Source of the DNA: Octopus bimaculoides
Lineage: Eukaryota
Assembly (NCBI RefSeq): GCF_001194135.2
Contig: NC_068981.1
Location: 137,168,184 to 137,231,862, forward strand
DNA length: 63,679 nt
Direction of reading: 5' to 3'
The position numbers and the translations under genes are program-made. Positions 1,855 to 62,810 of the stretch are shown here, piece after piece. A model generated the notes under the pieces. The model made no database searches. It was not told the DNA's origin and was given only the letters and a program-made list of their open reading frames with translations. The stretch's first letter is position 1, and the number at the start of each line of letters is the position of its first letter.

Positions 1855-2538
1855 GCACTGGTGATGGTGCTACATAAAAAAACACCGGTGCTGGTGCTAC
1901 GTAAACAGCATTGGTGCTGGTGTCATATGAAAAGCTAGTGATAGTGCCACATAAAAAGTGCTGGTGATGATGCCATGTACAGAGCATTGATGATGGTTCC
2001 ACATGAAAAAGCATTGGTATTGCTGTCACATGAAAAAGCACCTAGTGGTGAAGTCACATAAAATGTACTGGTGATGGTGGTGCATAAAAAAATGCTGATG
2101 TTGGTGCCATGTAAAAAGCACTGGTGATTGTGCCACAAAAAAGCACTGGTGATTGTGCCACATAAAAAGCCCTGATATTGGTGCCGTGTAAAAAGCATTG
2201 GTGATTGTGCCACAAAAAAGCACTGGTGGTTGTGCCACATAAAAAGCCCTGATATTGGTGCCGTGTAAAAAGCACTGGTGATTGTGCCACAAAAAAGCAC
2301 TGTTGATTGTGCCACATAAAAAGCCCTGATATTGGTGCCGTGTAAAAAGCATTGGTGATTGTGCCACAAAAAAGCACTGGTGATTGTGCCACATAAAAAG
2401 CCCTATGACACCAACACCAATGTTTTTTATGTAGCACCAGCACCAGTGTTTTTTTATGTGGCACAAACACCAGTGCTTTTTTTTTTTGTGGCATGAGCAC
2501 CAGTGCTTTTTACATGGCATTATTACCANNNNNNNNNN

Positions 2539-2595
<57 letters not shown>

Positions 2596-2705
2596 AAAAG
2601 CACTGGTTCTGGTGCCATGTAAAAAGTATTGGTGTTGCTTCCATGTAAAAAGCACCTAGTGGTGATGTCACATAAAAAGCACTATTGATGGTGCCCTGTA
2701 AAAAG
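1855..2705. repeat. Minisatellite of 25-27-bp monomers (GTGCCACATAAAAAGCACTGGTGATT-like) with a 77-bp higher-order core
   Basis: 77-bp units start at 2104, 2181, 2258 and 2335. An inverted block lies at about 2408-2528, and further monomers at 1370-1446 lie left of the SINE insertion. Confidence 0.85.
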
Positions 2706-3585
2706 CACCCAAAACCAAGCCAAGACAGATTATGGAACCTGGTGTGGCCCCTGGCCATGCTAGCTCCTGCCAAGCTATCCAATCCATGCCAGTATGGAAA
2801 ACAGATGTTAAATGATTATGATGATGATGAATACAAATGTGATATGAGGCACCTGAATTTCATGTTAATGATGCTTGTATGCAAAATGTCAAGTAGTGAA
2901 ATCTGGTTTCATCTGCATTACATATCAAAATTTAAAAAATTTAAAACAAAAATCCAACTCATTTAAATTTATTTTGGTCATATTACAAAATAGAAATAGC
3001 TATGTTTATTTTAATGAATAAATTATAAGATGTAAAATACATCTAGAAACTAGACAATTCTTTTAGAAATATATATAATTTATTTTTATATACTTGAAAC
3101 ATAACATTATTTGTTGAATATTATAGAAATTAATGCAAAAAATTTCTTTATTGTGTTTAATATTGATATGTGCTATGGCTAAGTGGATTAAATATTGGAT
3201 GACGTCTTTTTAATATTATCAATATCATTGTTATAGTATTAGATAGAAGTAAAATTTAATATTTCTTTCTGAGGCTCAGATGCAGACTTATTAGTGTCAT
3301 TGAGAAGTTTGCTGTTTAACTAAGTGGTTTTGGGTTTAGTTAGTGTGTGGAACCTTGGGCCAGTGTTATTGACAATAGCCCCAGATGACCAAAGCACCGT
3401 GAGTGGGTTTGATAGACAGAAACTGAAAGAAGCCAATGGCACACACACACATATACACACACACATGTGCACACACACACACACACACACATTCTCACAC
3501 ACATACATTCATACACACATGCACTCACACACATACATACAGACACATGCACACACATATGCACACCCACACACAAGCATACTTT

Positions 3586-9430: not shown

Positions 9431-10020
9431 GAGAAGCATGACCTTCTAATGTTGGGCCTCACAGAGGAAATGACAAGAGACCGAGACCTTTGAAGATATG
9501 ATGTGATTGAGAAGATCTGGCAACTAAAGTGAGATCGCCATGGTCTATGCCAGTGTTGCATGTCCAGCCCATTTAAAAGTACCCTTGATGTGTCGGACAA
9601 TATGATATGCTTGAGAAAACCTGTTGAGTCAAAACCAAAATCGTAGCTGTGGCCAGTGCCCCCTGACTGGCTCCTGTTCCAGTGGCACATAAAATGCACC
9701 ATCTAAACCTGGTCGATGCCAGTGGCTCCTGACTGGCTCCCATGCCAGTGGCATGTAAAAAGCACCATCCGAACATGGCTGATACCAGTGTTGTCTACTG
9801 GTTCCCGTACTGGTGGCACATAAAAAGCACTATCTGAACGAGAACGATGCCAGATCCACCTGACTAGTTCCTGTGCCAGTGGCATGTAAAAAGCACCCAC
9901 TACACTCTTGGAGTGGTTGGCATTAGGAAGGGCATCCAGCTGTAGAAACCGCCCAACCCATGCCAGCATAAAAAACAGAAGGTAAACAATGATGATGATG
10001 ATAATGACAATGATGATGAT
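9431..10020 (+). mobile_element. 3' end of an RTE-clade LINE (ORF C-terminus, 3' UTR with about 66-bp modules, (ATG)n tail)
   Basis: Translates to EKHDLLMLGLTEEMTRDRDL*RYDVIEK (RTE-like C-terminus), followed by four modules, GGAAGGGCATCCAGCTGTAGAAAC and a (GAT)n tail. Related copies at 11870-12146, 18193-18494, 32277-32443(-), 36020-36390(-), 56686-57100. Confidence 0.65.
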
Positions 10021-10102
10021 GTATGCTTTAACTTAAATGGAAATAATATATAGGGATGCCTCAACTTGAATGGAAATAATACATAAGTATACCTCAACTT
10101 CA

Positions 10103-10479
10103 CCCCCGTGGACTATCACCTTAACATTGGTTCAGGGTGCTTGCGTGTTTTAATGACCTGAAGAGCTATGCTGTCCAGAACCTTGTATTCCTGGTAGGGT
10201 CAGCCAAGGCAGTAAGATCGGCAGGCAGAAGTCAGACAAAGAATAGTCCACTCACCTTTCAGGTTGAGGGTTGAGCAATGGGCTAACAACCCATTCTCAA
10301 AAAAAAAAGCTCTTATTACAGAACCCAAAAGCGCTCAAAGAGAAAATTCATACCACACGAAACCAGGCTTTGAAACATCATGGAATGCGACAAGAAAACT
10401 TGAAAAACCAAGGAATAAATGGAAAACAAGTGTGGGGGCCTTATGTGCCAGCTGGTATGAAGAGGATAGATAGATAGAT
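10103..10479 (+). mobile_element. Internally deleted non-autonomous RTE-type element (5' UTR fused to 3' end)
   Basis: 5'-UTR-like motif AGGTTGAGGGTTGAGCAATGGGCTAACAACCC, 3' part encoding KPRNKWKTSVGALCASWYEEDR, (GATA)n tail, and putative TSD ACTTCA (10097-10102 and 10480-10485). Confidence 0.6.
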
Positions 10480-10936
10480 ACTTCAAGTTAAATGGAAATA
10501 ATATATAGGTATACCTCAACATAAACCATTTCAAGTTATATATTTTTTGATAGAGAGCATAAACCTCAACTTCAGTCAATTTATCTGACTTTACATTGGA
10601 CTCAGCAAATATATTTAAAAGTTCCTTCCTTTCTGAGATGCATATATAGACTCATAGGGCTGGTTTCCCAGTTTCCATGGAATATATATTCCCCACCTGA
10701 TGGGATGCTGGTCTGTCACATGACTGCCCATTTTTGCCTGCTGAGTGAACTAGAGCAACGTGAAATGAAGTGTTTTGCTCAAGAACACAACGCACTGCTC
10801 GGTCCAAGAATCAAAACTACAATCTTACAATCATGAGTCGAATACCCTAAACACTAAACCACATGAGTCCACCAATACATGTAAAAACATAAAAATTGAG
10901 TAAACACCTAAAACTAATATTCAACTGGAAAATCAA

Positions 10937-11343
10937 GAGTGGCTGTGTGGTAAGTAGCTTGCTTACCAACCACATGGTTCCAGGTTCAGTCCTACTGCGT
11001 GGCACCTTGGGCAAGTGTCTTCTACTATAGCCTCGGGCCGACCAAAGCCTTGTGAGTGGATTTGGTAGACGGAAACTGAAAGAAGCCCGTCGTATATATG
11101 TATATGTATATATATGTGTGTGTGTTTGTGTGTCTGTGTTTGTCCCCCCAACATCGCTTGACAACCAATGCTGGTGTGTTATGTCCCCGTAACTTAGCGG
11201 TTTGGCAAAAGACACTGATAGAATAAGTACTAGGCTTACAAAGAATAAGTCCTGGGAGCGATTTGTTCAACAAAAGGCGGTGCTCCAGCATGGATGCAGT
11301 CAAATGACTGAAACAAGTAAAAGAGTAAAGAGTAAAAGAGTAA
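10937..11343 (+). mobile_element. Full-length tRNA-derived SINE (family C, internal TA/TG microsatellite); the most abundant repeat in the window
   Basis: Head GAGTGGCTGTGTGGTAAG...GGTTCAGTCC, body GTGAGTGGATTTGGTAGACGGAAACTGAAAG, (GTAAAAGA)n tail. Many partial copies on both strands, e.g. 51-200, 4200-4420, 29320-29765, 39015-39620, 58340-58705. Confidence 0.85.
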
Positions 11344-11371
11344 ACCATTTATTGAAATAGATATAAACTAA

Positions 11372-14011
11372 TCTATATATATAAAGATGAGAGTATGTGT
11401 GTGTCTGTCTGTCTGTCTGTGTGAATGCCTAAAACTTGAGAACTACACAACCAATTTCATTCAAATTTTACACATGCCTTACTTAGGGTCCATGTAGTGT
11501 CATAGGCCCAAAAAATGTTTAACTTCTTGCCTAGTGCGAGTCCAGAGCAATATCATATCTTCTCCACTATTTCAGTATTACGTGTGAAAAGTGAAACAAT
11601 AACATGTCTTTATTGTAATGTCAGATAGTTTCACTTTAATAGTTTCACTTTAATACTGAAACTATTAAAGTGAAACTATTATCTCACATATATACAGGCA
11701 TACATACATATATACATACTTACATATATATAATATATATATATATATATATACATCTGCCCAAATGTATATATATACATGTATATATATAGATGTATAT
11801 GTATACATGTATATGTATAGCTGTATATGTATACATGGNNNNNNNNNNTGGCCTTGTAGGGTTTTCGAGCGAGATCGTTGCCAGTGCCCCTGGACTGACT
11901 CTTGTGCGGGTGGCACATAAAAGACACCATTTCGAGCGTGGCCGTTTTCGTGCGGGTGACACGTAAAAGCACCCACTACACTCTCTGAGTGGTTGGCGTT
12001 AGGAAGGGCATCCAGCTGTAGAAACTCTGCCAAATTAGATTGGAGCCTGGTGTAGCCATCCGGTTGCACCAGTCCTCAGTCAAATCGTCCAACCCATGCT
12101 AGCATGGAAAGCGGACGTTAAAGGATGATGATGATGATGATGATGTATAGATGTATATATATAGATATAAATGTGTATGTATACATATATATGTGTAGAT
12201 GTATATATATAGATGTACATGCAATATGTACACATATATATACAAATATATATATGCACACATATATATACCCATACGCACATGTACATAGGTGCAGGTG
12301 TGGCTGTGTCATAAGAAACTTGGTTCCATATTTTTCTTTGCCCACTCAGTTGTATCTATTAATCTATCTTTTTGTGTGTGTGTGTGTGTGTGTGTATATA
12401 TAATACACACACACACATACATGTATGTATATGTGCATTTTCATATCTATTATATAAAAGTCAATGTCTTTTTGTGTGTTACATATACATTCGAAAACTA
12501 CTGAAATTTGGAACACAAAATCCAAGCCTAGGGAGAAAGGTAATGCTGTATGTTTCATACAATTTCATGGACCAATACTACTGAATGGATCCTTATGATA
12601 TTTGAAACTTAGATCCAATGCAAAAGGGTGGGTATAATGCTATCAAAATTGATAAATTTTCGATGAGTATTCTCAAAGTTTCTACTTCTCATGAGGATTC
12701 TAAGACCCCTAATGGGGGCCTTAACTCCCAAATTTTAGTCATTTTTTTATAATCCAAAACTAGGTCAAAAGTACTGAATGGATCTTTATGAAATTTGGAA
12801 ATTATATTCTATGCATAAGGGCCATAACCCCCATGAAAATTCATATATTTTTGCTGTTGATGAAATTTTAACCATAGATATTAGACACAAATGAAGTAAT
12901 ATTTCTAAAATTTCATCTTCTTAGAAGTTAGAAAGACCCCTTCATGGGGACTTAACACCCACTATTTAGTCATTTTATCTAAGCAAAGACGTATACAGTT
13001 GTACTCTTGGAAGCTGTAGGGTCACCGGTGCATAAAAGATGAGCATTATTTGTAATTCAATGGTACAACAGTGTAAGAGTTTGCTTTGAGGTATACTTAC
13101 ATTGTGATTTCTGCAATGTGGTGCATAAATTGTCAAGTAAATGAGAGGCTTCTTTGCCTCCACTGATTCAGTTGCAAAGTGTTGAGTTAAGTTATTTGGT
13201 TGCAGACCTCCTTTGAGTCTTTTTATTATCACTGGGTCACACATAGTCCCCAGATGGTAACATTGATTTCAAGGCCTTCCCAGATGAGTGACTGGTTATT
13301 CAAAGACATTAATAGATTGTAAATTTATTCTGTCCAGTTACCTATCAGTATAGTTGTCATTTGCAAACTTCAGAGGTGACACTTTCATTTCCCCTTACAT
13401 CACACATTGTTAATGTTTTAGTTGGGTCACACCCTTCCAATTGCTATAGATCCGTAATGCATCTTACGGCTGTACCTGTCACTTGTATGGTGAGGAATCC
13501 TACATTGGGAGTAGTAACGACTGGGTAGGGTAGCTGACTGCTTATAGTGATCATTTGTCTTTTGGTTTCCTGTAGCTTTGCTCTCTTTTACAAACCCAGT
13601 GAACATACATACATTTCCTATTTCAAAGAAATTCAAACAATAGATATAAGACCCATGTTAAAAAGATTCTTAACAATTCAACTTCTTTGGTTGATATTAA
13701 GACACCCACCCCCAGTAGGGGCCTTAACTCTCACATTTTAGAGCTCCATGACCTCCATTTTTCAGGAGCAAAATCCTTTTAACAGGTTCCAGAAGACTGG
13801 AATTTTGGAATCTGTACTTAAAGATCAGTAGTGTGGGGTACATATGTCATGATTAGAATTTTTTTAGGGTTTGTAAAGAGGGAAATAACCCTCATCTGCA
13901 ATTTTGATGAAATTCGAATCATAGGTATTTCAGCTCATTAGAGAAAATATAACAGAAAAGTCTAATTCTTCAATTGCATGTAACACGAACAACGTCAAGT
14001 ATCTCTGCTAG
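11372..14011 (+). mobile_element. Probable non-autonomous Helitron with nested insertions
   Basis: 5' A|TCTATATATATAAAG followed by a (TGTC)n tract; 3' degenerate hairpin and CTAG|T. Two internal duplicated modules of about 200 bp (about 12560-12975). Nested microsatellites and a LINE tail at 11690-12410. Confidence 0.55.
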
Positions 14012-18075: not shown

Positions 18076-19473
18076 CTAACCACTGGGATATGTGCCTTGA
18101 CTCTACAGCCCCACTGTAATTTCAATTGCCTTAAAACACTCAGACATGCTTACAACACTCCTAAATACCACCCTAAAACCCCTGTCGCCTTCCTGGCACG
18201 TGAAAAGACATTTGAGCGAGGTCGTTGCCAGTGCCGCTGGACTGGCTCCTGTGCAGGTGGCACATAAAATACACCATTTTGAGCGTGGCCGTTGCCAGTA
18301 CCACCTGACTGGCCTTCGTGCCAGTGGCACGTAAAAGCACCCACTACACTCTCGGAGTGGTTGGCGTTAGGAAGGGCATCCAGCTGTAGAAACTCTGCCA
18401 AATCAGATTGGAGCCTGGTGCAGCCTTCTGGCTTGCCAGTCCTCAGTCAAATCGTCCAACCCATGCTAGCATAGAAAGCGGACGTTAAACGATGNNNNNN
18501 NNNNNNNNNNNNNNNNNNNNNNNNNNNNNNNNNNNNNNNNNNNNNNNNNNNNNNNNNNNNNNNNNNNNNNNNNNNNNNNNNNNNNNNNNNNNNNNNNNNN
18601 NNNNNNNNNNNNCACTTGTTCTTGCCCCTGTATCCCTTTCTACTCTAGGCACAAGGCTCGAAATTTTGGGGGAGGGGGGGGGGGCAGTCAATTAGATCAA
18701 CCTCAGTATGCAACTGGTACTTAATTTATCAACTCCAAAAGGATGAAAGGCAAAGTCAACCTCGGCGAAATTTCAACTCAGAACGTAAAGAGACGAAATA
18801 CCGCTAAGCATTTCGCTCGGCATGCTAACGTTTGTACCAGCTCATTGCCTTCTTGCTCCTTTATCCTACTCTTCCCTCTTAACACCTGGTATAAACCACC
18901 TCACTCAATATTGCACTAAGGGTTCTTGTTTTACGAGCTACTTGGCAACCTCATTAGTGCTGGTGACATGAAAAAGTACTCAGAGTACTCTGTAAAGTGG
19001 TTGGCTTTAGGATGGACATCTCGCCATAGAAACCATGCCAAAACAGATATGGGAGTTCAATGTAGTCTCTTGATCTGTTAGATCCTGTCAAACCATCCAA
19101 GTCATGTCAGCATGGAATATAGATGCTATATGATGATGATGATGAGGATTAGGCAGCAAGCTTGGCAGAATTGTTAGCATGCCAGGCAAAATGCTTAGCA
19201 ATATTTTATCTGTCTTTACATTCTAAGTTCAACTTTACCTTTCATCCTTTTGAGATCGATAAAATAAGTACCTGTTGAGGACCGGAGTCCTCGGTAAGAG
19301 TATAAAAACTGCAGCACTCAGCCAAGCCATGTTGAGCCATTGCGGTAGAGTAGGTCCATCAAACCAGTATGATATCAAGCTCAAATTCACAGCCTCCACA
19401 TCAGACTGTATTTGGTGGAGAGAACATGCCAAGGCCTTTGTCCTGCTGTGGACTGAATATGGGCAAACCAATC

Positions 19474-23058: not shown

Positions 23059-24765
23059 TTAAGATGTTTGGGCCACATCTCTAGGTGTTGATGGTTTTAT
23101 TTTAGCTAAAAGCTTTGATGAAAGTGGTGATAGGGATTGCAGGGGAGGAGAAGTGGAACAACAATGGTTAACATTTTTGTTGGTTTTGTTATAGTTGGAT
23201 GGTGGTGGAATCGGAGAGGGAAGGGAACAAGCTGGAGATGAAGAATATATTTTTGGAGCTTGAATAGAAGGCAGAGTTGAATTGGAGCCAAGATTCAGTA
23301 GATGGTCTTTATCATGGATCAGCAAACACGTTGCAAGAATTTTATTTGGTTCACTAACTGTTATAGTAAACTTTGAAACACCAGTGTTGGGAGACACACG
23401 TAGAGCATGGCTTTTACCACCAGGAAATTTACATTCAAGTTCATCGATAAAAATTCGAATGAGTTCTTTTAAAAATCCCCCATGGCTAACAATTAAGACG
23501 TCAGCTATACTTTGATGGCAACTATCCCCATCATCAAAACTACTGCTACGACCAGAGCTCATACTAGAGAAGTTAGAATGACGATGTTCCAGTAGAGGAG
23601 AGAGCGATACATTGGGACAGCCATGCTTTGTTGTCTTTGGACATGGGATGCTCCCTCGAACCTCAGCATCTGTAACTGGTACTGTGAAAGGAGAGTCATA
23701 GCAGGAATCAGAATTCTTAAAACAAAAATCGTCGTCGTCATCATCGTCATCATCGTCGTCATCGTCATCATCACCATCATTATCAAGAGTATCATCATAT
23801 TCATCATCCAAATGAGCTGTGATACTATTATCATCCGAATCTAGTGTCTCACTCTCCTCCTGGAGACTGGAGAAACCAGAACTACTTGATGAGTTTGACC
23901 TTTTCATGTTTCCTCCAAGGTTACCATTCCCATTGCTAGTATTTGATGCACCATCAGTATGATCAACAATATTGCTATCATTAGTAGAGGTTCTATTATT
24001 ATTATTATTATTGTTTAACCTAATATCACCGGGTTTAGCAATACCAGACCCAATGGCTGAATTTATACCATTGGATCCAGTATGATTGGGGTTAACATTA
24101 TTGGCTCCTTTGTCCAAAAGCGTTACAGGCAAAGAGTTTTTTGATACTCTTGCTGTTTCAACCACAACCAAAGAGGAAGAAACTGAGTTAATAGATGCAC
24201 TGTTTTTATTTTCAGGCTTTGCTATTATATCATTTTCACAGCCATCATTCAGTTCGGTGTTATTACTTTCCAAAGATGACAAAGAATTCCTTGTTCCTGC
24301 AGCTACTGCTGGAGTACATCCATCGTTACAGTTCTTATTTCTGCTACTGCTATTTGTCAATTCCTGAACTGAAGAAATCGTCCCAGAACTTTTATTAGAA
24401 TTTACAGTGATTCCTTGATCACTGAGAGTTGCTGGGACAGAATGCTTTATTCTGCTGCTGCTCTTTTCACTTACGATTGCAATTTCCAGCTTTGAATTTG
24501 GGTTATTGTGATGCTTAGCATGTGTGTGTCTTCTCCGCTTGTGTTCACTATCATCGTAAGCTGCAGTCGTTATCACTGGTTTTATATTTACTGAGCAATC
24601 AGTCTGATCAGTTTTAGGCTGTTCATGCTCTTGTTTTGTACTATTGATTGCATCTATATAGCGGCGCTTAATTGGTGCAGGTACATAATTGCCATCTTCT
24701 ACCTGGCTGCTTTTACGTATTTGATCACACAAATCTTTGAAGAATGATTTTGCCCTTTCTTGCAT
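23059..24765 (-). CDS. TIGAR: TIGAR-like histidine phosphatase, terminal coding exon (568 aa, phase 0 start, TAA stop)
   Basis: 1.7-kb uninterrupted frame directly after an AG acceptor (24766-24767) with a pyrimidine tract. Starts MQERAKSFFKDLC (TIGAR helix equivalent to VKMRGIDFFEFLC). Contains DVLIVSHGG (His codon 23482-23484), SPNTGVSKF and TCLLIHDKDHL, typical of the TIGAR C-terminal half. Confidence 0.93.
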   Translation of the reverse strand: MQERAKSFFKDLCDQIRKSSQVEDGNYVPAPIKRRYIDAINSTKQEHEQPKTDQTDCSVNIKPVITTAAYDDSEHKRRRHTHAKHHNNPNSKLEIAIVSEKSSSRIKHSVPATLSDQGITVNSNKSSGTISSVQELTNSSSRNKNCNDGCTPAVAAGTRNSLSSLESNNTELNDGCENDIIAKPENKNSASINSVSSSLVVVETARVSKNSLPVTLLDKGANNVNPNHTGSNGINSAIGSGIAKPGDIRLNNNNNNNRTSTNDSNIVDHTDGASNTSNGNGNLGGNMKRSNSSSSSGFSSLQEESETLDSDDNSITAHLDDEYDDTLDNDGDDDDDDDDDDDDDDDFCFKNSDSCYDSPFTVPVTDAEVRGSIPCPKTTKHGCPNVSLSPLLEHRHSNFSSMSSGRSSSFDDGDSCHQSIADVLIVSHGGFLKELIRIFIDELECKFPGGKSHALRVSPNTGVSKFTITVSEPNKILATCLLIHDKDHLLNLGSNSTLPSIQAPKIYSSSPACSLPSPIPPPSNYNKTNKNVNHCCSTSPPLQSLSPLSSKLLAKIKPSTPRDVAQTS

Positions 24766-25841
24766 CTAAAACAGAAAAAGAAAGATATATTCAGTAAAAC
24801 AATGCTTTAATAAAATGGTACTAATTGGAAAAACCAATTATAAATTATATAAAAAAGTGTCTTTTAGTCAGTATGTATAAATCACTTTAGAATGTATCTT
24901 CCACAAAATTATTACAATAAAAATCAGGGTCTAAAGAAGAAATTATTATATGCCAACTAAACCAGTAAATGAAAATGTTTTAAGCTCTTTATATAAACAT
25001 ATTGACAGATATATATTTTGGTTAACACTTAAAGCTGATAATATTTTTAAAATCTCTTTCAGTCCAAGAGAAAGGACAAACCTCCTCCCATGACCCATTA
25101 CAAAACTTTAGGAGAGGAGGGAATGTATCCTAGAACAAGAAACCTAACTTGGATGCTTGCTACTGAGTGGATCCTGTTACTTTACTGAGCCTTAATCTAA
25201 TGGTTAGGGTGGTGCACTCGTGATCATGGTTTCAATTCCTAGACCGGGTGGTGTGTTGTGTTCTTGAGCAAAATACTTCATCCCATGTTGCTCTATGATC
25301 ACTTCGACACCTGATACGTGGCACACTGTGCACTTGTTCCGGCAACGTTAATTTGATGAAAGGAGTGAGCTAATGAACAGCACATACATTTGATCACTAT
25401 AAACAAATCATTTGTGCAGGTCGTTTGACAAAAGCTGAGCGCTCATATGTCGTCTTTGATGGGATATTCTATCATCATTATTATTATTAGTTTACATGTT
25501 GGTATCACATAAAAAGCACTCAAGCCAATACCATGTAAAAGTGCTTGTGCCATTGGTATATTAAAAGTACCCAGCACACACTGTAAAGTGGTTGGCATTA
25601 GGAAGGGCATCCAGCTGTGGAAGCGAAGCCAAATCAAACTGGAGTCTGGTGCAGCTTCCCAGCATGCCAGCTCTGGTCAAACAGCCCAACCCATGCCAGC
25701 ATGGACAACAGGCATTAAAGGATGATGATGGTAATTGATGATTAATGATGATGATGATGATGAATGAGATGATGATGCTGATTGATTATTATTATTATTA
25801 TTATTGACTGTATGATGATGATGATGTTGTAAAAGAATTAC

Positions 25842-25952
25842 CTGTTGTAGAGTTTCTGCGCCAGTTGGTGTATAATTGGCCACAGAAGTATTTATTTTTT
25901 TGGCAGCAGTCACCAGTTCACGATAACCTTTTCCCTCAATGATACCAAATTT
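25842..25952 (-). CDS. TIGAR: TIGAR-like coding exon (111 nt): KFGIIEGKGYRELVTAAKKINTSVANYTPTGAETLQQ
   Basis: AG at 25953-25954, GTAATT donor from 25841, phase 0-0. The K-x-G-x-x-E-G and TPxGAETL motifs match histidine phosphatases and join in frame to both neighbouring exons. Confidence 0.93.
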
Positions 25953-33435: not shown

Positions 33436-33632
33436 CCGTTCCCGAAGTCGTTTGTCATGGACTATAACAATATGTTCACAGCATTTGTTGTTTTCTACTA
33501 TCACCTTTGCGGTTTCAGCAGCACGGTTAAGGTCACTTGCAAAGACATGGGTAAAGTTCTCGTTTTGTAGCCGACCAGCTACCAGACGGACTTGGTCGAG
33601 ACCAGTAGATGATAATTGCCAATCTTTCTGGC
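33436..33632 (-). CDS. TIGAR: TIGAR-like coding exon (197 nt): (G)QKDWQLSSTGLDQVRLVAGRLQNENFTHVFASDLNRAAETAKVIVENNKCCEHIVIVHDKRLRER
   Basis: TTGCAG acceptor (AG 33633-33634), GTAAGT donor from 33435, phase 1 start and phase 0 end. Contains FTHVFASDLNRA (substrate-binding Arg) and DKRLRER (catalytic Glu). Confidence 0.95.
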
Positions 33633-34019: not shown

Positions 34020-34890
34020 CTGTAAGCATGAGTGATTTTATGCCAGTCAGTTAAGTGGTCTTTGTTTGGTCATGGTCTAACATTTCTGAATGTATAGTAG
34101 CAGCACCATTCCAGATATGAGTAATATTCCATTGTGTGTCCTACTTGAGCCTTGTAGAGCATCAGCAATTGTCAGAGGCTTAGATATTTTCAGACCCTGA
34201 TGAGAAAGGCCAGTCTTTGGGATATAGTCCCGGTTATGTTGAGAATGTGCCTGGTCATAGTGGGGCCTAAAATTTGGATCAACCTTGGAAGCTGGCTGTA
34301 AGTTGAATGCTGCTCATGTTTAAGTTGGGTGTGGTGCAATGCTGTTTTCTTAATATGAGTAGTGCCTGAGTTGCTTTTGCCTGCTGATAGAGACAAAAAT
34401 TGGCCAAGCTGCACTGGATCATGTTTATAGGTTTCCATTCATGAAATTGGTACTGATTTGGTGAGTGGTGTTTAGATTGTATGAGGATGATGCAGGTTTG
34501 AGGAAGATTAGGGTAGAATGAAGGTTTGTATCATCTGTGTAAGAGAATGCATGGTTGTATGTGACAGCAAGTAGGTCATTGATATATAGAGGGAAGGGAA
34601 GAGAAGAGAGTGTGGAATAAAACTCACTCCTGGTGCTCATCGAATCTGATTGAGAAAGGGACAAAAATAGTTCTATCGATATGCTGTGATGATGTGATCT
34701 GATAAGAAAAGGAGTGGAAGACAAAAACCAAACTCTGGAGAATATTGAAGTTGGTTCAGAATGGGACAGAAAGAGCTCCATCACCACACACCATGATTGT
34801 ATGATCTGAAAGGAAACTACTGATGCAAAAGATGAGAGAAGGATGGAACTTCTAAGTACAAAGTTTTGATAGTAGATTTGTATAACAAAC
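34020..34890 (-). mobile_element. Decayed CR1/Jockey-like LINE reverse transcriptase fragment
   Basis: LYINDLLAVTYNHAFSYTDDTNLH matches the FINDL...YADD RT motif; surrounding frames are disrupted. Confidence 0.55.
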
Positions 34891-35020
34891 ACAGCCAAAA
34901 GCTTTACTGGAAACTAGAGCAGCAATGTTATTTTTACTGACTTTCTAAACGGCAAGAACCCCACTGGTGGGTCTCCACTAGGTTTGGCTCTATGGAAGCC
35001 TTACTGGTGGTCATTAAAGT

Positions 35021-44941: not shown

Positions 44942-44979
44942 CTTGAATTATATTCTTCCTGTTAGCTACAGTCTCCCCA
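44942..44979 (-). CDS. TIGAR: TIGAR-like micro-exon (38 nt): (H)GETVANRKNIIQ(G)
   Basis: Not in the ORF track; found by manual search. TTTCAG acceptor (44980-44981), GTAAGA donor from 44941. Reads T GGG GAG ACT GTA GCT AAC AGG AAG AAT ATA ATT CAA G, completing the RHGxTxxN motif and joining in phase 1 to the 197-nt exon. Confidence 0.9.
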
Positions 44980-45159
44980 CTGAAATAATGAAAAAAATAA
45001 AAAAGGAGATATTTAGACACAAGTAAAACAAGCAGAGCAAAATATGTTCCATAAAATCAAATATCAACAATCAAATAACAGAATGACAAATTAAAATCTA
45101 GGGAAACAAGGTTACATTAATTAAATAAATTAATGAAGAAATTCTTGTGTGTGTATACG

Positions 45160-45225
<66 letters not shown>

Positions 45226-47497
45226 AGTAAATCATTGCGACTATTTAACATCTGGTTTTGAAAAAGTTTTGACATTTAGCAGTTAATTTTTTTCTTCTAA
45301 TTATTAACTGCATAACTTTGCTAACAACCAAAATTAACTTGAACTGGATTACTAGACATGCTACAGCAAGTACATAATGAACATAGACTAAACATACAGA
45401 GTGATGGAAGCCAATGAAGGAGCCTATACATGGCTGCACATGCTAGAAATGACAGCCAAATACACCGCCCTCGTCCCCACCATACCCTACTCTTTTAAGA
45501 AACGAAGATAACATTGATTGGATAATGAAGTCCTAGAAAGGGATGGTCAATATCAGAATGGCTTTTGATCGCGAAATGAAACAGCATTTAAGCTCGCTAA
45601 TGAAAATACTTTACATCATTCAAAAAGATGCTAAAAATGGCAGTCAATTTTCTCACAGACTAAACCCTACTCCTTTAAAAAGAAAAATGCACTTAGGATA
45701 ATGTTGTCCAAGGTGGACTATTTCTGAGAAAAAGACCGACTGACATGGCATTTGATCAGTGGTTGATTTTACCAGGGCTGACCTGGGACTACAAAATAGA
45801 TTTGAACACACCAAGCTGAGACACCAGTGGTGACCCTCTTCGGCACAAGTCCAGGCAAGGTTGTTTATGGAAGACCAGCAGTCACCCATACATACCAGCC
45901 TCCTCTCTCCATGCCTCCAATGTTATCCAAGGAAAAGGCAAAGGCCGATACAACTTGGCACAAGTGATGTTGCCACTCATTTCTACAGCTGAGTGAACTG
46001 GAGCAATGTGAAATAAAAGTGTCTTGCTCAAGAACACAACATGCAGCACGGTCCAGGAATCGAACTCACAACCTCACAATTGTAAGCTTGATGCTTGTTC
46101 TAACCACTGAGCCATGCACAAACACAGTCTCTTAGGCTGAACTGCTTAGTTATGGGAACATAAACACACCACCAACAATTGTCAAGTGATGGTGGGAGCA
46201 CAGACACACATAAATACATACACACACACACACACATACGATGAACTTCTTTCAGTTTCTGTCTACCAAATCCACTCACAAGGTGCCATGCAGTGGGACT
46301 GATCCTAGAACCATGTGATTGGAAAGCAAGCTTCTCACTACACAGCCACACCTAATAATCAAGACTGCATAACTATCACTTGACTGATAACAGTAATGTG
46401 GTCTAAATCTGTTGCTCTGGTCTGTCTCCGACTGATGTTTATAATGTCTCAAATCATTAATTTTAAGAAAAAATAATTAGCAGTTAATTAACAATATAGT
46501 ATTTGATGAAGAGTAATTATTATAAACAATAAAGCTGCAACATCAACAGAGTTTATATCATAAGAGGAATTTATACTATAAACAGGCAAATGGCAGCATA
46601 TATGACCAGGTCATAGACTAATCAGTTAAATTTTCTATTTAGAATGTAGTTTATTAGTCTAAATAACTTCTAATTATACTCAATACAGAAAAAGAAAATC
46701 TACTTGTAAGTAATTAATTATTTATTTATTACCGTAATAATGATAATGATGATAATAATAGTAACGATTTATAACAGATGCAAGGCCACAAATTTTGGAG
46801 GAAAGAGTTAATTATCTTGAGCCTGAACTTGGTGGTGTTTTATTTTTTCGCTCTCAGAAGGACGAAAGACAAGGCAGACATCAGCCGGATTTGAACTCAG
46901 AACAAATAGTACAGGGGAAATTTGTCCAACTCACTAATAACTCTGTCTATCCACTGCCACGATAAGGATGGTTTTTAACAGAGGTACAAGGACTGGAAAT
47001 TGGGTGGAGGGGGGTGTTAATCAATATCATTGATCTCAGTACCTGACTGGTACTTCATTTTAATGACTCAGAAAGGACAAAAGACAAAGTTGACTTTGGT
47101 AGGATTTGAACTTAATACACAGAGGGCCACAACAAATAATGCAAGTCTGACACAAACAATTCAGCCAAACTATCATCATCACCATCATTATGATGATGAT
47201 GGTGGTGATGTTAATGATAATTGCTTGTAATATAGGCAAAAAGCCAGCAGTTTTGCAGGAAAGGGAATTGTTGATATCATCACCCCCCCCCCCCNNNNNN
47301 NNNNNNNNNNNNNNNNNNNNNNNNNNNNNNNNNNNNNNNNNNNNNNNNNNNNNNNNNNNNNNNNNNNNNNNNNNNNNNNNNNNNNNNNNNNNNNNNNNNN
47401 NNNNNNNNNNNNNNNNNNNNNNNNNNNNNNNNNNNNNNNNNNNNNNNNNNNNNNNNNNNNNNNNNNNNNNNNNNNNNNNNNNNNNNNNNNNNNNNNN

Positions 47498-47530
<33 letters not shown>

Positions 47531-49282
47531 TCCAAAGCAACAACAAAATTAAAGCCACTGTATAAAAGAAGGTCAATTACTACATCTTGTTGATTGTTAT
47601 TTACTCAAAAGGAACTACCCTCTCCCAATGACTTTTAAGATTTCGGTTAGATTAGCCAAAATGAGTGGAGCAGGTCAGCTTGATCTTGCAGTATGGTAAA
47701 ACAACAGCTGTATCACAAACAGCGAAGAGCTAACAACATAAAGCCTGACAGTTGGCTGCCACTTGTGGATATAAAAATAAAATATCCCAATCTCAAGTCT
47801 CTGCCTCCTGCTAAGTAAGCATTCCATAGTAGTTGCTTAATAAATGACGACGACGATGGCAAAAAGAACACAAAGAAAATAATATAAAAAAGAAAAACAA
47901 TCAACAGTATAGGTTTTTTTTTCTCCTCTCAAATAGATATGTATGACATATGCTCTCTTATTCTCTCTCTCTTGCTATCTTTCACTCATTTCTTCTGTCT
48001 CATGTACATAAATCATTTCCTCCCTATCTTTCTCTGCCTCTCTGTCACTCGCTCTCTCTCACTCATGTATAGCCGTACATTGAGTCATAGAAGTATACAC
48101 ACAGAACTATACAAGTTTCATAAAAGAAAAAAGAAAAAGAAAAAAGAAAAAGAAAAAAGAAAAAGAAAAAAAAACACACAGCAAATACTGAAAATGTTTT
48201 GTATTAGTACAGAAGCATCACAATCATCATCATTATCATCACCGTTCTCATCATTTAACATCCATATTCCATGCTGGCATGGGTTGGACAATTCAACAGA
48301 AAAAAAAAAAAACGAGCCAGAGACTGTACCAAGCTCCGATATTGAAATTAAAAAATGATGCAGAGTTGACCATGTAGGGTGGTTATGAAGTTTGTTTCAC
48401 AACTGCATGGTTTCAGGTCCAGTTCCACCACACAGTACCTTGGGCATGTGTCTTCTACCACAGCCCTGGGTAGCCCAATATCTTAAGACTAAATTTGGTA
48501 GAAGGAAATTGAGTAGAAGCCTGTTATATAAATATGTTTTTAAAAAAACCCAAAAGCCTGTAAGTGGTTGCTTGAAATGCTAGAAATAGACACACTGAAC
48601 TATTAAGTTACCTAACATAAAAAATGAAATGACAGAATTATGGATATACAATTCACTTTGAGAATATGAAGTTTTGAATTCTATCTCAATGCGTGGCATC
48701 TTGGGCATGTACCTGCTACTGTAGCCTCAGGTCAAATAATGCCTTGTGGGTGGAATTAGTAGATAGAAATTGTAAGGAAGTACAAGAGTATGTTTGTGTG
48801 TGTATGTGTTTAGACATATACATACATGTATATCACCTCTTCAGTAAGACATGCTCTTTTCCTATCATAATTTCATAAACAACCAGTCTATATCCCACTC
48901 AGTAGATGGGTTCTTATCTTGAAGGTACTTGGCAACCTCATTGGTGCTGGTGCCACATAAAAAGCACCCAGTACACACTGTTAAGTGGCTGCTATTAGGA
49001 AGGGCATCCAGCAAGAGAAACTACACCAAAGCAGACATAGAACCTGGTGGAGGCCTGTGGTTTGTCTCTTCTTGTCAAACCATCCAACCCCTGCCAGCAT
49101 GGAAATAAATAAAAAATAAATGTTTCCTTCTTGAGCCATGCCAGGCTCATAAAGGCTGGTTTCCCAGTTTCAATGGCGTATATATTCCTCACCTGGATGG
49201 GACGCCGATCCATCACCAAATTACTCGTTTTTGCCAGCTGAGTGGACTGGAGCAATGTGAAGTGAAGTGTTTTGCTCAAGAA

Positions 49283-49500
49283 TATGGTCAATGCTGCCAT
49301 AATCTTTGCCTTCAGTTTATCTTTGATGTTACAAGGAGTTTTGTTGGTCCCTCAATCAACTGCACTCCACACATAATAATTAAGGGGGCTGCAGTCTGGA
49401 GAGTTAGGGTTGCAGTCTGGGAGATGTTAGGGGTAATGTGGTCGCAGATATTGTCTGACAGCTACGACTGGGTTTTCCTGCTTGTGTGGCATGGTGCATG
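49283..49500 (-). mobile_element. Short fragment of the same DD37D mariner family
   Basis: Aligns by eye to about 63040-63240 (GCTGCCATAAT...TTGTCTGACAG...CCTGCTTG). Confidence 0.7.
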
Positions 49501-49849
49501 ATAGAAATTTAGTGTAGACATGGTTTTAGTTTGCTGTTTTGCCTGATCTTTTTCTAATTTCTTTTCTCAGGGGTGAATAACAGTGGAGCAGGTCAAGCAA
49601 GATGACTTTAGTTAATTGCTAATTATCAATGACAACTGACAACCCAGCAGACATGTCAGACCGAGAGAGACACAAATTAACTTTGGTTTGTATAGGCACA
49701 GGCATGGATGTATGGTTAAGAAGCTCACTTGCAACCCTGTGGTTTGGGGTTCAGTCCTACAGCACATTGGGCAAGTGTCTTCTACTAGAGCAGTGGGTCG
49801 ATCAATGCCTTATGAGTGAATTTGGTAGATAGAAACTGTGTGGAAGCTT

Positions 49850-49880
<31 letters not shown>

Positions 49881-50169
49881 AAGAGAAAGAGAGTGTGTGT
49901 GTGTGTTTGCGTCTGTCACCCACCCGCTGTTTGACAACCAGTGTTGATTTGTTTACAGCTTCCATAGCTTAGCAGTTCAGCAAAAGAGACAGATAGAACA
50001 GGTGCCAGACTTAAAAAAAAAACCCCATAAATACTAGGGTCCCATTTTCCCCTATACACAGGAAGGAAAGACCATTGTCCAAGCACCCCATTATGTAAGA
50101 TGGTGTAGGATTAATTGAGCGAGATTTGGTCATTATTTCTAGTAGGTTTGGTAACCATGTAGAGGGCAC

Positions 50170-50222
50170 TGTCTAAATAAGGCAAAGGCAACCTTTACCC
50201 TGAAATGGGCCACGTGATTCAT
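50170..50222 (-). CDS. Candidate TIGAR first coding exon: MNHVAHFRVKVAFALFR(H)
   Basis: Only in-window site I found with an Arg codon + CA + GT preceded by a substantial open frame, a hydrophobic strand and gccATG (in-frame stop upstream). The donor GTGCCC is weak and abuts a repeat, so it may be chance; the true exon may lie beyond 63679. Confidence 0.25.
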
Positions 50223-50545
50223 GGCTCATCATCAAATGGGCTGCACTACAAAAAAATTTCAAAGCAATTTTTTATTGAGCATGCCATTCAAAAAGCCCCA
50301 CAGGCCACAACCTGCTCATGGCTGATCTAAATGTCTCTTTGTAGTGGGGTATGTTATGTTCAAGTTGCAAGTGGTGGGGAGGGTCATATGGGTTGAGCTA
50401 TGAACCAGGTCTTTAAAATGTTTAAGTATACTTTTAGTTTAGCGGTTTTGGTCGACAATTAGTTTCATCAAGGATTATAGTTTTTATGGTTTACAAGTTC
50501 ATTATTTACATTTGACGGATATTTGTCCCCATCTAGTTTGTTGTT

Positions 50546-50591
50546 AACACAACGTTTCGGCTGATATACTCTCCAGCCTTCATCAGGTGTC
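50546..50591 (-). ncRNA. Minimal type I hammerhead ribozyme motif (second, identical copy on the opposite strand)
   Basis: The reverse complement of 50546-50591 is identical over 46 nt to 50656-50701. Predicted cleavage between 50551 and 50550. Confidence 0.75.
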
Positions 50592-50655
50592 TTCGGGAAA
50601 TTTTGAACCCAGGTTTGAAATTAGGAATGAGAACCACAGTTCGAAATTTCCCCAA

Positions 50656-50701
50656 GACACCTGATGAAGGCTGGAGAGTATATCAGCCGAAACGTTGTGT
50701 T
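50656..50701 (+). ncRNA. Minimal type I hammerhead ribozyme motif
   Basis: Stem I GACAC/GTGTT; core CTGATGA followed by an extra A; stem II GGCTG/CAGCC with 10-nt loop; GAAA; palindromic ACGT in place of stem III; predicted cleavage after GUU (50696). Confidence 0.75.
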
Positions 50702-53497: not shown

Positions 53498-53528
<31 letters not shown>

Positions 53529-54097: not shown

Positions 54098-54146
<49 letters not shown>

Positions 54147-61617: not shown

Positions 61618-61649
<32 letters not shown>

Positions 61650-62728: not shown

Positions 62729-62800
<72 letters not shown>

Positions 62801-62810
62801 CACACACACA

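What the first reader, a model, noticed from the sequence alone, without database searches (positions are those of the whole stretch)
23503..24717. TIGAR with about 350 extra disordered residues inside the catalytic domain
Seen: from L12 (FFKDLC) to the His of VSHGG (residue 428 of the exon) is 417 aa of Ser/Asn/Asp-rich sequence in one open frame. Known (from memory): the equivalent span in human TIGAR is about 60 aa and the whole protein is 270 aa; the model here is about 700 aa. The His, Asn, Gln, Arg, Glu and second His positions of the active site are all retained in the exons found. Inference: an active phosphatase carrying a large lineage-specific regulatory or scaffolding loop.
Basis: partly seen in the sequence, partly recalled or inferred. 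Interest (0 to 1): 0.7.

Follow-up and report, generated by a model that had tools for sequence, protein, structure and literature searches.

The report
Extra-long loop in an invertebrate TIGAR
The window holds a real TIGAR-type phosphatase gene whose last exon encodes a 415-residue floppy loop inside the enzyme, but loops of 130-330 residues at this spot are normal in invertebrate TIGARs, so this is the longest example of a shared old feature rather than a lineage-specific invention.

Summary
Observation confirmed. On the minus strand, one 1,707-nt exon (24765..23059) stays open for 568 codons. It places 415 residues between the C of FFKDLC and the His of VSHGG; human TIGAR has 58. The stretch is Ser/Asn/Asp-rich, has coding-type codon periodicity, and AlphaFold2 predicts it disordered.

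The gene is a TIGAR orthologue. Its best solved relatives are human and zebrafish TIGAR. Its exon boundaries match Haliotis, Pomacea and an unnamed mollusc contig.

A long loop at this site is general in invertebrate TIGARs:
- molluscs 200-330 aa;
- brachiopod, chelicerates, myriapods, nemertean, nematode, rotifer, echinoderms 128-250 aa;
- hemichordates about 318 aa.

The loop is also not featureless. It carries conserved islands, and the last one (CPNVSLSPLLEHR..SS.SSGR.SSFDD) is better conserved among molluscs than the catalytic core.

What is particular to this window is about 90-215 extra residues of unalignable spacer with poly-N and poly-D runs, plus a 61-residue C-terminal tail.

Arg10/His11 lie in an exon not present in the window, so full catalytic competence is not shown. 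Ordinary gene, extreme member; modest interest.

The parts
44942..44979 (-). Exon 1b: T|GGG GAG ACT ... CAA G, encoding (H)GETVANRKNIIQ(G). It carries only the third base of the His11 codon, plus N17 and Q23.
   Evidence: tblastn with mollusc proteins. Sequence and splice sites cag|T ... G|gtaaga. Haliotis has the same intron positions and phases.
33436..33632 (-). Exon 2: (G)QKDWQLSSTG...ASDLNRAAET...HDKRLRER. It contains the R61 and E89 equivalents.
   Evidence: tblastn with human TIGAR at 1.6e-11. Splice sites ttgcag|GC and CGG|gtaagt.
25842..25952 (-). Exon 3: KFGIIEGKGYRELVTAAKKINTSVANYTPTGAETLQQ.
   Evidence: tblastn. Splice sites ttttag|AAA and CAG|gtaatt.
23059..24765 (-). Last exon, 568 codons plus stop. 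In order: helix FFKDLC, the 415-aa loop, the C-terminal half of the catalytic domain, then a tail.
   Evidence: ORF. Acceptor ttttag|ATGCAA. The same exon start and single-exon layout occur in Haliotis, Pomacea and Logan contig L003.
23485..24726 (-). The loop itself: exon residues 14-427, model residues 129-542.
   Evidence: AlphaFold2 block-mean pLDDT is about 50 or lower with almost no secondary structure in two runs.
24661..24699 (-). Island 1: EDGNYVPAPIKRR. The consensus in relatives is D..Y.PA.IKRR, ending in a basic patch.
   Evidence: Alignments A1 and A2. P144 is invariant in molluscs and K148 is at least 90% conserved across phyla.
24508..24555 (-). Island 2: DDSEHKRRRHTHAKHH, a basic cluster that looks like a nuclear localisation signal. 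It corresponds to KRPR(H/T)E or KRRRHE in other species.
   Evidence: The motif is seen in most mollusc, centipede and horseshoe-crab sequences. The exact homologous position in the window is uncertain, because MAFFT instead pairs KRPRTE with IIAKPENK at 24205-24237.
23995..24015 (-). Poly-Asn run (N7) encoded by (AAT)n.
23848..23904 (-). Island 3: KRSNSSSSSGFSSLQEESE, a serine cluster. The mollusc consensus is RSNSSSSSGCSSL.DS.E.
   Evidence: Alignment A1. Mean column identity is 0.65 among molluscs.
23728..23772 (-). Poly-Asp run (D15) encoded by (GAT/GAC)n.
   Evidence: TRF array 23729-23808. Run length.
23620..23676 (-). Island 4a: VTDAEVRGSIPCPKTTKHG. Compare Lottia VTDGEIKMSITCPKYTSTG and the D.EIK pattern in other molluscs.
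   Evidence: It overlaps the only short helix predicted in the loop (model residues 481-486).
23524..23619 (-). Island 4b: CPNVSLSPLLEHRHSNFSSMSSGRSSSFDDGD, lying about 13 residues before the catalytic His. It is the best conserved stretch of the protein.
   Evidence: Invariant C498, P499, N500, H509, S515, S516, S519, G520, R521, S524, F525, D526, D527 in A1. N500 is invariant and P499, V501, P505 are at least 90% conserved across phyla. Mean column identity is 0.88 against 0.63-0.72 for the core.
23476..23490 (-). VSHGG, holding the second catalytic His (human H198, zebrafish H183).
23062..23244 (-). A 61-residue Pro/Ser-rich C-terminal extension past the conserved end motif. IQAPKIY here corresponds to ..APGTF* or ..AKGIY* in other molluscs.
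   Evidence: Alignment A1. pLDDT below 50. Coordinates.

Best explanation
This is the last exon of the TIGAR orthologue (fructose-2,6-bisphosphatase TIGAR, histidine phosphatase superfamily branch 1) of a mollusc-like lophotrochozoan. The 415-residue stretch is genuinely coding and is an intrinsically disordered loop. It leaves the catalytic domain after the helix FFKDLC and re-enters it at the strand that carries the second catalytic His.

The loop is not a new insertion. A long loop at this site is the usual state in invertebrate TIGARs, and the 58-residue vertebrate loop is the short outlier. The human loop still aligns with the loop's last part (SSKVNSDSGIP... against SSGR.SSFDD.D..P).

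The loop is built of short conserved islands separated by fast-evolving spacers. The islands are a basic IKRR patch, a KRPR/KRRR patch that looks like a nuclear localisation signal, a serine cluster RSNSSSSSG.SSL, and CPNVSLSPLLEHR..SS.SSGR.SSFDD.D next to the catalytic His. In this lineage the spacers have grown by roughly 90-215 residues, partly through trinucleotide-repeat slippage (poly-N, poly-D).

Inferred mechanism: the islands are short linear motifs for localisation and multi-site serine phosphorylation. SSFDD fits the casein-kinase-2 consensus S-x-x-D/E. Through them the loop would tune where the enzyme sits, and perhaps access to the positively charged active site that the last island adjoins. 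The spacers act only as flexible linker.

Shown here: coding status, exon layout, orthology, disorder prediction, and the spread and conservation of the loop. Inferred: every functional role assigned to the islands.
For: Coding status:
- 568 open codons, P about 1e-16.6, with codon periodicity and 17-94 stops in each of the other frames.

Orthology and fold:
- PDB sequence search puts human TIGAR 3DCY at 1e-37 and zebrafish TIGAR at 4e-30, against 1e-6 or weaker for phosphoglycerate mutases.
- Foldseek's top five hits are TIGAR entries.
- Pfam His_Phos_1 scores 104 bits.
- Sources name the relatives 'Fructose-2,6-bisphosphatase TIGAR'.

Exon layout:
- The boundaries match Haliotis, including the split His codon and one terminal exon for residues 125-437.
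- They also match Pomacea and contig L003.

Loop is general:
- Spans are 200-324 aa in 18 mollusc sequences.
- Spans are 128-322 aa in 40 representatives.
- Named taxa cover protostomes, echinoderms and hemichordates.

Conserved islands.

Disorder:
- Block-mean pLDDT across the loop is about 50 or lower (51 in the first block), with no secondary structure except one 6-residue helix.
- The core scores 88-97 in its N half and 72-85 in its C half.

Window-specific spacers:
- Model residues about 160-201, 263-289, 297-381 and 437-454 have no counterpart in at least half of the aligned sequences.
- The first 250 aa of the exon found no homologue at all.
- (AAT)n and (GAT/GAC)n arrays lie inside the loop.
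Against: - No transcript data: whether the exon is ever spliced internally in this species is untested.
- Pomacea isoform X3 removes 113 loop residues, including the KRPR and serine-cluster islands, through a GC-AG intron inside the exon.
- The exon with Met..Arg10 and two bases of His11 is not in the window, so an intact active site is not demonstrated.
- No close relative (same class or order) was found in any database. The age of the extra spacer and any selection on it therefore cannot be measured.
- The list favours long-loop proteins, because the search profile contained loop positions. It shows that long loops are widespread, not how frequent they are.
- The roles assigned to the islands rest on consensus-motif resemblance only.
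Confidence: 0.8

Rival explanations
1. One reading: the loop is a large lineage-specific regulatory or scaffolding module that arose in this lineage and gives TIGAR a new function there.
For: - At 415 aa it is the longest loop seen. The next longest are 322 aa among aligned representatives, 324 aa in the partial gastropod ORF P0019, and about 330 aa in Pomacea X1.
- About 150-190 residues have no aligned counterpart in other species.
- The first 250 aa of the exon have no homologue among 5.8 billion proteins.
- The frame is kept open through all of it.
Against: - The insertion site, the loop and its four islands are shared with other phyla.
- The window-specific parts are compositionally biased (S, N, D) and include repeat-derived runs.
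- They are predicted unstructured and show no detectable domain.
- No relative is close enough to test whether the extra residues are under selection.
Confidence: 0.12
2. Part of the open frame is removed from the mature mRNA as an internal intron (an exitron), so the real protein has a much shorter loop and the 415-aa figure is an artefact of reading genomic DNA.
For: - Pomacea canaliculata isoform X3 lacks 113 loop residues, bounded by CA|GCAAGT ... ttccag|C inside the homologous exon.
- The window has an acceptor-like TTTCTCCAG|T at the same GFSSLQ motif (23866) and a consensus donor-like ATC|GTAAGT at 24474.
Against: - None of the donor/acceptor-like pairs found is in frame (differences 106, 608, 793, 911, 287, 472, 590 nt). 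Using them would destroy the C-terminal catalytic half.
- An intron would not be expected to stay stop-free and codon-periodic for 1.2 kb.
- The full-length form is the annotated product in Haliotis, in Pomacea X1 and in the other mollusc models retrieved. The partial Lottia model P0027, which skips most of the loop, is the exception.
- The scan covered only near-consensus splice sites.
Confidence: 0.06
3. The locus is a decaying or catalytically dead copy. The first coding exon is missing, and the bloated loop and read-through C-terminus are signs of relaxed constraint.
For: - Exon 1a (Met..Arg10, two bases of His11) was not found in 18.7 kb upstream.
- The protein runs 61 aa past the conserved C-terminus.
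- Repeat-derived homopolymer runs lie in the loop.
Against: - All four exons found have intact frames and consensus splice sites.
- N17, Q23, R61, E89, the second His and island 4b are all retained.
- The upstream region contains assembly gaps (47295-47497, 56157-56198).
- Intron 1 is 8 kb in Haliotis, so a 32-nt coding exon can easily lie in a gap or beyond the window.
Confidence: 0.04

Closest known systems
Vertebrate TIGAR (human, PDB 3DCY; zebrafish, PDB 3E9C/3E9D/3E9E)
   Same: - Same fold and family.
- 42% identity to human TIGAR (3DCY) over the 140 aligned N-half columns and about 37% over the C-terminal half.
- Same catalytic residues where visible: GET, N17, Q23, R61, E89 and the second His.
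- The loop leaves and re-enters the domain at the same two points.
- The last part of the loop still aligns (window SSGRSSSFDDGDSCHQSIADVL against human SSKVNSDSGIPGLAASVL).
   Different: - The vertebrate loop is 58 aa against 415 aa here.
- The vertebrate loop lacks the IKRR, KRPR, serine-cluster and CPNVSLSP islands.
- The vertebrate protein is 270 aa against about 694 aa.
Mollusc 'TIGAR-like' or 'uncharacterized' proteins in RefSeq/UniProt, e.g. Haliotis asinina XP_067673895.1 (437 aa), Pomacea canaliculata XP_025096984.1 (548 aa), Argopecten, Mytilus, Littorina
   Same: - Orthologues, 46-59% identical in the N-terminal and 49-67% in the C-terminal core.
- Identical exon structure.
- Same loop position and the same four islands in the same order.
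   Different: - Their loops are 200-330 aa.
- The window has about 90-215 more residues of unalignable spacer, poly-N and poly-D runs, and a 61-aa C-terminal tail.
TIGAR orthologues of other invertebrate phyla: Lingula XP_013413022.1, Limulus XP_013783736.1, Uloborus, Nymphon, Hemiscolopendra, Strigamia, Priapulus, Tubulanus, Plectus, Acanthaster, Anneissia, Ptychodera XP_070540678.1, Saccoglossus
   Same: - A long Ser-rich loop at the same site (128-318 aa).
- The CPNVSL(S)P motif is shared with brachiopod, chelicerates, myriapods and priapulid.
- Basic KR(R/K)R patches are frequent.
   Different: - The serine-cluster and SGRNSSFDD parts are largely restricted to molluscs and brachiopod.
- Hemichordates keep only a weak (T)PNVV trace.
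- All these loops are shorter than the window's.
Other branch-1 histidine phosphatases: dPGM, the PFK-2/FBPase-2 phosphatase domain, PhoE/YhfR, phosphoserine phosphatase
   Same: Same catalytic core and mechanism class (RHG...H).
   Different: Far weaker matches (E 1e-6 or worse against 1e-37). They have no long disordered loop at this site.

Membership tests
Histidine phosphatase superfamily, branch 1 (Pfam PF00300) | Sequence match to the family profile above the curated threshold | tested here: met
   His_Phos_1 scores 104.2 bits against a cut-off of 21.7, E=9.1e-30, on model residues 1-131. The last exon alone gives no hit, because only the short C-terminal half of the domain lies in it.
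Histidine phosphatase superfamily, branch 1 | The N-terminal RHG motif carrying the nucleophilic His (TIGAR Arg10-His11) | tested here: inconclusive
   Only G12-E13-T14 and the third base (T) of the His codon are in the window (44979). The exon with Arg10 and CA was not found in 44,980-63,679. Haliotis has the same split codon, AGG CA|gt ... cag|T GGT.
Histidine phosphatase superfamily, branch 1 | Second catalytic His, plus the Arg and Glu of the phosphate pocket. In TIGAR these are R61, E89 and H198 (human) or H183 (zebrafish), as listed in PMC9682291. | tested here: met
   SDLNRAAET (Arg), RLRER (Glu) and VSHGG (His) align with the human and zebrafish residues. The residue list comes from PMC9682291.
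TIGAR (fructose-2,6-bisphosphatase TIGAR) orthologue group | Closer to TIGAR than to any other histidine phosphatase | tested here: met
   PDB sequence search gives 3DCY at 1e-37 and 3E9C-E at 4e-30, with the next family at 1e-6. Foldseek's top five hits are TIGAR entries. The nearest database proteins are named TIGAR or TIGAR-like by NCBI and UniProt.
TIGAR orthologue group | TIGAR-type substrate-pocket residues Asn17 and Gln23 | tested here: met
   In GETVANRKNIIQG, N falls at position 17 and Q at position 23 in TIGAR numbering. N6 and Q12 of the model are invariant in 31 sequences.
TIGAR orthologue group | Phosphatase activity on fructose-2,6-bisphosphate or 2,3-BPG | not testable with these tools
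   Needs a purified-protein assay.
Invertebrate long-loop TIGARs (defined here, not a curated family) | A loop of more than 120 aa between helix FF..LC and strand ..SHG, all in the terminal exon | tested here: met
   415 aa in the window. 128-322 aa in 40 representatives. The same single terminal exon occurs in Haliotis, Pomacea and L003.
Invertebrate long-loop TIGARs | The CPNVSLSP motif 30-50 residues before the second catalytic His | tested here: met
   CPNVSLSPLLEHR lies at 23581-23619. N500 is invariant and P499, V501, P505 are at least 90% conserved in A2.

The most novel reading that the evidence does not exclude
The long loop of invertebrate TIGARs is an ancient bilaterian regulatory region that vertebrates trimmed to 58 residues. 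Its most conserved element, CPNVSLSPLLEHR..SS.SSGR.SSFDD.D, lies directly before the strand bearing the second catalytic His. When multiply phosphorylated (CK2-type SSFDD priming, then upstream serines), it would act as a switch that occludes or opens the basic active site or controls nuclear/cytoplasmic placement. The window's 415-aa version would be that switch on an unusually long tether.
Probability: 0.35. Interest if true: 0.5.

Novelty: new member of a known kind. Interest (0 to 1): 0.3.

Why it matters
For the genome this is an ordinary annotation result: a TIGAR orthologue whose large terminal exon should be kept whole by gene predictors. The Lottia model P0027 shows what happens otherwise.

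The wider point is modest but real. TIGAR has been studied almost only in vertebrates, where the loop is short. The comparison here suggests that the long loop with its conserved serine-rich and basic motifs is the widespread, probably ancestral, state. One of those motifs is as conserved as the active site.

I found no paper describing this; full-text searches on TIGAR with 'mollusc' and on TIGAR structure terms turned up nothing relevant. If the motifs are regulatory, invertebrate TIGARs would offer a view of controls on glycolysis and pentose-phosphate flux that vertebrates lost.

Tried and rejected
**First coding exon.** I searched for Met..Arg10 + CA in three ways:
- regex for RHG(E/Q)T and looser forms in all six frames;
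- patterns requiring ..R + CA|GT;
- BLOSUM scoring of every 9-mer followed by CAGT upstream of 44,981.

The only hits were repeat copies at 56,082 and 56,472. I conclude the exon is in a gap or outside the window.

**Close relatives or the source species.**
- The full-model search returned only non-cephalopod molluscs at no more than 67% identity.
- The first 250 aa of the exon found nothing.
- The loop-deleted query found no closer named relative.
- The exhaustive profile search found none either.
- An exact look-up of the 568-aa ORF was not on record.

The source organism was therefore not identified, and the extra spacer could not be dated.

**Other checks that led nowhere.**
- Pfam on the last exon alone gave no hit. 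This is because only half a domain lies in it, and it is not evidence against membership.
- The in-frame internal intron scan found no compatible pair.
- Rfam and tRNA scans of the window found nothing.
- Pfam on six other long ORFs found nothing. A reverse-transcriptase-like 'YTDD' stretch at 34428-34913 and a transposase-like stretch at 63170-63397 therefore remain unverified impressions.
- Look-ups of Pomacea P0007 and P0017 failed because only the longest isoform is indexed. This was solved through isoform X1.
- Literature searches for TIGAR with 'mollusc' and for TIGAR structure terms found nothing relevant.

**Idea rejected.** I considered that the loop is a domain insertion. There is no Pfam match and no confident structure in two AlphaFold2 runs.
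Full report
**1. What is in the sequence**

The finding lies on the minus strand. The ORF 24765..23059 is 568 codons long. It begins exactly at a consensus acceptor, ttttag|ATGCAA. Its translation starts MQERAKSFFKDLC and reaches ..ADVLIVSHGG at residue 426-430.

From the C of FFKDLC to that His is 415 residues.

The loop is 16% Ser, 11% Asn and 11% Asp, with runs N7, S5 and D15. These runs are encoded by (AAT)n and (GAT/GAC)n arrays.

**2. It is more than chance, and it looks coding**

- At the local base composition a stop is expected every 15 codons or so. The probability of 568 open codons is about 10^-16.6.
- 1000 shuffles of the exon never gave more than 189 open codons.
- The next longest open run in the 63.7-kb window is 208 codons, in a simple repeat.
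- The five other frames of the exon hold 17-94 stops.
- Codon positions are strongly periodic.

An unspliced intron would not be expected to look like this.

**3. The gene**

tblastn with human TIGAR and with mollusc proteins finds the other exons on the same strand:
- exon 1b, 44979..44942: (H)GETVANRKNIIQ(G)
- exon 2, 33632..33436
- exon 3, 25952..25842
- the terminal exon

All have consensus splice sites and join in frame. The 683 residues seen match Pfam His_Phos_1 at 104 bits. Their best solved relatives are human TIGAR 3DCY (E=1e-37) and zebrafish TIGAR (4e-30). Phosphoglycerate mutases score 1e-6 or worse.

An AlphaFold2 model built with 31 homologues has a confident core: pLDDT is 88-97 in the N half and 72-85 in the C half. 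Its best Foldseek hits are the same TIGAR entries.

The pocket residues listed for TIGAR are Arg10, His11, Arg61, Glu89 and His183/198 (PMC9682291), plus Asn17 and Gln23. All are present except Arg10 and His11. The His codon is split by an intron (..CA|gt ... cag|T GGG), exactly as in Haliotis asinina. The small upstream exon was not found in the 18.7 kb of window upstream. That region holds two assembly gaps.

**4. The exon is a conserved unit**

- In Haliotis asinina the RefSeq protein maps to the genome with residues 125-437 in one terminal exon. The two preceding boundaries are the same as in the window.
- In Pomacea canaliculata residues 123-548 are one exon.
- In an unnamed mollusc-like contig (Logan SRR26493809) the exon starts at the same residue after ttgtag|.
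- Two gastropod ORFs called on short contigs (P0018, P0019) start at the same Met and run to the stop.

**5. The decisive comparison**

All 19 proteins found with the full model are mollusc proteins of 374-534 aa, two of them partial ORFs. In every one where both anchors are present, a long loop sits at this very site: 200-324 aa.

An exhaustive profile search of 1.84 billion representatives was followed by alignment of the hits to the profile. It gave 40 proteins with both catalytic halves, and their span is 128-322 aa.

Names recovered for them, with spans and lengths:

| Group | Species | Span (aa) | Protein length (aa) |
|---|---|---|---|
| Freshwater mussels | Potamilus, Sinanodonta | 226 | 444 |
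| Pearl oyster | Pinctada | 179 | 438 |
| Brachiopod | Lingula | 195 | 399 |
| Horseshoe crabs | Limulus, Tachypleus | 250 | 464 |
| Spider | Uloborus | 212 | 433 |
| Sea spider | Nymphon | 240 | 488 |
| Centipede | Hemiscolopendra | 236 | 449 |
| Centipede | Strigamia | 151 | 373 |
| Ticks | Haemaphysalis and others | 143 | 370 |
| Priapulid | Priapulus | not measured | 465 |
| Nemertean | Tubulanus | 147 | 366 |
| Nematode | Plectus | 175 | 376 |
| Rotifer | Didymodactylos | 187 | 395 |
| Starfish | Acanthaster | 181 | 356 |
| Crinoid | Anneissia | 128 | 354 |
| Hemichordate | Ptychodera | 318 | 539 |
| Hemichordate | Saccoglossus | 317 | 519 (partial) |

That is largely what the data show. 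The window is still the longest:
- 415 aa against 322 aa among aligned representatives;
- 324 aa in the partial ORF P0019;
- about 330 aa in Pomacea isoform X1.

One caveat applies. The search profile contained loop positions, so the top of the list favours long-loop proteins. It proves that long loops are widespread, not how frequent they are.

**6. The loop is not featureless**

The alignments (A1, A2, mapped to the window) show islands in a fixed order:
- **Island 1:** D..Y.PA.IKRR directly after the helix (window EDGNYVPAPIKRR).
- **Island 2:** a basic KRPR(H/T)E or KRRRHE patch. The window has DDSEHKRRRH; its exact homology is uncertain, because MAFFT pairs the motif with IIAKPENK instead.
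- **Island 3:** a serine cluster, RSNSSSSSGCSSL.DS.E (window KRSNSSSSSGFSSLQEESE).
- **Island 4a:** D.EIK..I (window VTDAEVRGSI).
- **Island 4b:** CPNVSLSPLLEHRLSSISS.SSGRNSSFDD.D (window CPNVSLSPLLEHRHSNFSSMSSGRSSSFDDGD), ending about 13 residues before the catalytic His.

Island 4b has a mean column identity of 0.88 among molluscs, against 0.63-0.72 for the catalytic core. Across phyla the figures are 0.68 against 0.63-0.67. CPNVSL(S)P is shared with brachiopod, chelicerates, myriapods and priapulid. HMMER aligns the end of island 4b with the end of the human loop, which suggests the vertebrate loop is a trimmed version.

Between the islands nothing aligns (0.11-0.23 identity). The window has four stretches with no counterpart in most species: model residues about 160-201, 263-289, 297-381 and 437-454. 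The first 250 aa of the exon found no homologue at all among 5.8 billion proteins. These stretches account for the excess length.

**7. Disorder**

Two AlphaFold2 runs (19 and 31 sequences) gave 10-residue block means of about 50 or lower across the loop. They also predicted no secondary structure there apart from one six-residue helix in island 4a. The conserved island 4b is also below 50. The last 61-75 residues of the protein are likewise predicted unstructured.

**8. Internal splicing**

I could not test this directly.

For the possibility:
- Pomacea isoform X3 lacks 113 loop residues, including islands 2 and 3. The genomic boundaries are CA|GCAAGT and ttccag|C, a GC-AG intron inside the exon.
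- The window has an acceptor-like TTTCTCCAG|T at the same GFSSLQ motif.

Against it:
- None of the near-consensus donor/acceptor pairs in the window exon is in frame.
- The frame is open throughout.
- The full-length form is the annotated product in Haliotis, in Pomacea X1 and in the other mollusc models retrieved. The partial Lottia model P0027 is the exception.

I put about 6% on the loop being largely spliced out as the main form. A minor alternative form cannot be excluded.

**9. How it most likely works**

Shown:
- It is a TIGAR orthologue with an intact frame and five of the seven pocket residues visible.
- It has a long, probably disordered loop at a site where the family generally has one.
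- Conserved short islands are separated by unconstrained spacers.
- The spacers have expanded in this lineage, partly by repeat slippage.

Inferred from established knowledge of short linear motifs:
- K-R-x-R patches fit the classical monopartite nuclear localisation signal.
- SSFDD fits the casein-kinase-2 consensus S/T-x-x-D/E.
- The serines spaced upstream of it are the kind of array that is phosphorylated hierarchically.
- S-L-S-P is a proline-directed site.

Island 4b is tethered next to the strand carrying the catalytic His. TIGAR's active site is described as open and positively charged (PMC9682291). A phosphorylated acidic segment could therefore plausibly modulate access to it. None of this was tested.

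**10. Verdict**

The identification as TIGAR is confirmed. 'Disordered' is supported. 'Lineage-specific' is not supported, except for the extra spacer. 'Active' is plausible but unproven.

It is a new and extreme member of a known, though unstudied, kind. Interest is modest (0.3). The more interesting by-product is the deeply conserved loop motif in invertebrate TIGARs, for which I found no literature.

Noticed in passing
window 44942-44979 and upstream to 63679: The codon of the nucleophilic His11 is split CA|T by an intron at the same position and phase as in Haliotis asinina (L001 3001-3032 and 11191-11228). The exon with Met..Arg10 is absent from the window. Assembly gaps at 47295-47497 and 56157-56198 could hide it.
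   Followed up: yes
window 23062-23244 (minus strand): The protein continues 61 Pro/Ser-rich residues past the motif IQAPKIY. That motif corresponds to the very C-terminus (..APGTF*, ..AKGIY*) of other mollusc orthologues, so the usual stop appears to have been lost or shifted.
   Followed up: partly
window 23524-23619 (minus strand); alignments A1 and A2: The loop segment CPNVSLSPLLEHR..SS.SSGR.SSFDD.D is better conserved among molluscs (0.88 mean column identity) than the catalytic core (0.63-0.72). Its CPNVSLSP part is shared with brachiopod, chelicerates, myriapods and priapulid. No described function was found.
   Followed up: partly
window 25680-25841 (minus strand): After the consensus donor CAG|GTAATT of exon 3, the frame stays open for 54 more codons of His/Asn/Ser repeats (HHHHHTVNNNNNNNQSASSSHSSSSSS). 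By homology this is intron, but a gene predictor could read through it.
   Followed up: partly
L002 (Pomacea canaliculata CM009763.1), terminal exon 10276-11553: RefSeq isoform X3 (XP_025096986.1) removes 113 residues of the loop through a GC-AG intron inside the exon (CA|GCAAGT ... ttccag|C). This deletes the KRPR and serine-cluster islands.
   Followed up: yes
P0027 (Lottia gigantea LOTGIDRAFT_56344, partial): This gene model jumps from ..GGEKVEQV straight to VTDGEIKMSITCPKYTSTGCPNVS... It skips the helix FF..LC and most of the loop, which is probably an annotation artefact caused by the unusual exon.
   Followed up: no
window 55836-56081 and 56226-56471: Two identical 246-nt open stretches lie 390 bp apart, flanking the N gap 56157-56198. 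This is a tandem duplication that may be an assembly artefact.
   Followed up: no
window-wide, e.g. 9706-10032, 11665-12069, 18153-18446, 56840-57154: Many copies of a short interspersed repeat, whose translations recur as ..LQLDALPNANHSESVVGAF.., together with abundant (TG)n, (TA)n and (CA)n microsatellites. Apart from TIGAR no protein-coding gene was recognised: Pfam on six long ORFs found nothing, and Rfam and tRNA scans were empty.
   Followed up: partly
L003 (Logan SRR26493809_160672), gene 2345-3334: This is the closest relative found: 71% identity in the C-terminal core, all islands present, loop of about 230 aa. It comes from an unnamed sequencing run. Identifying that organism would help place the window's lineage.
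   Followed up: no
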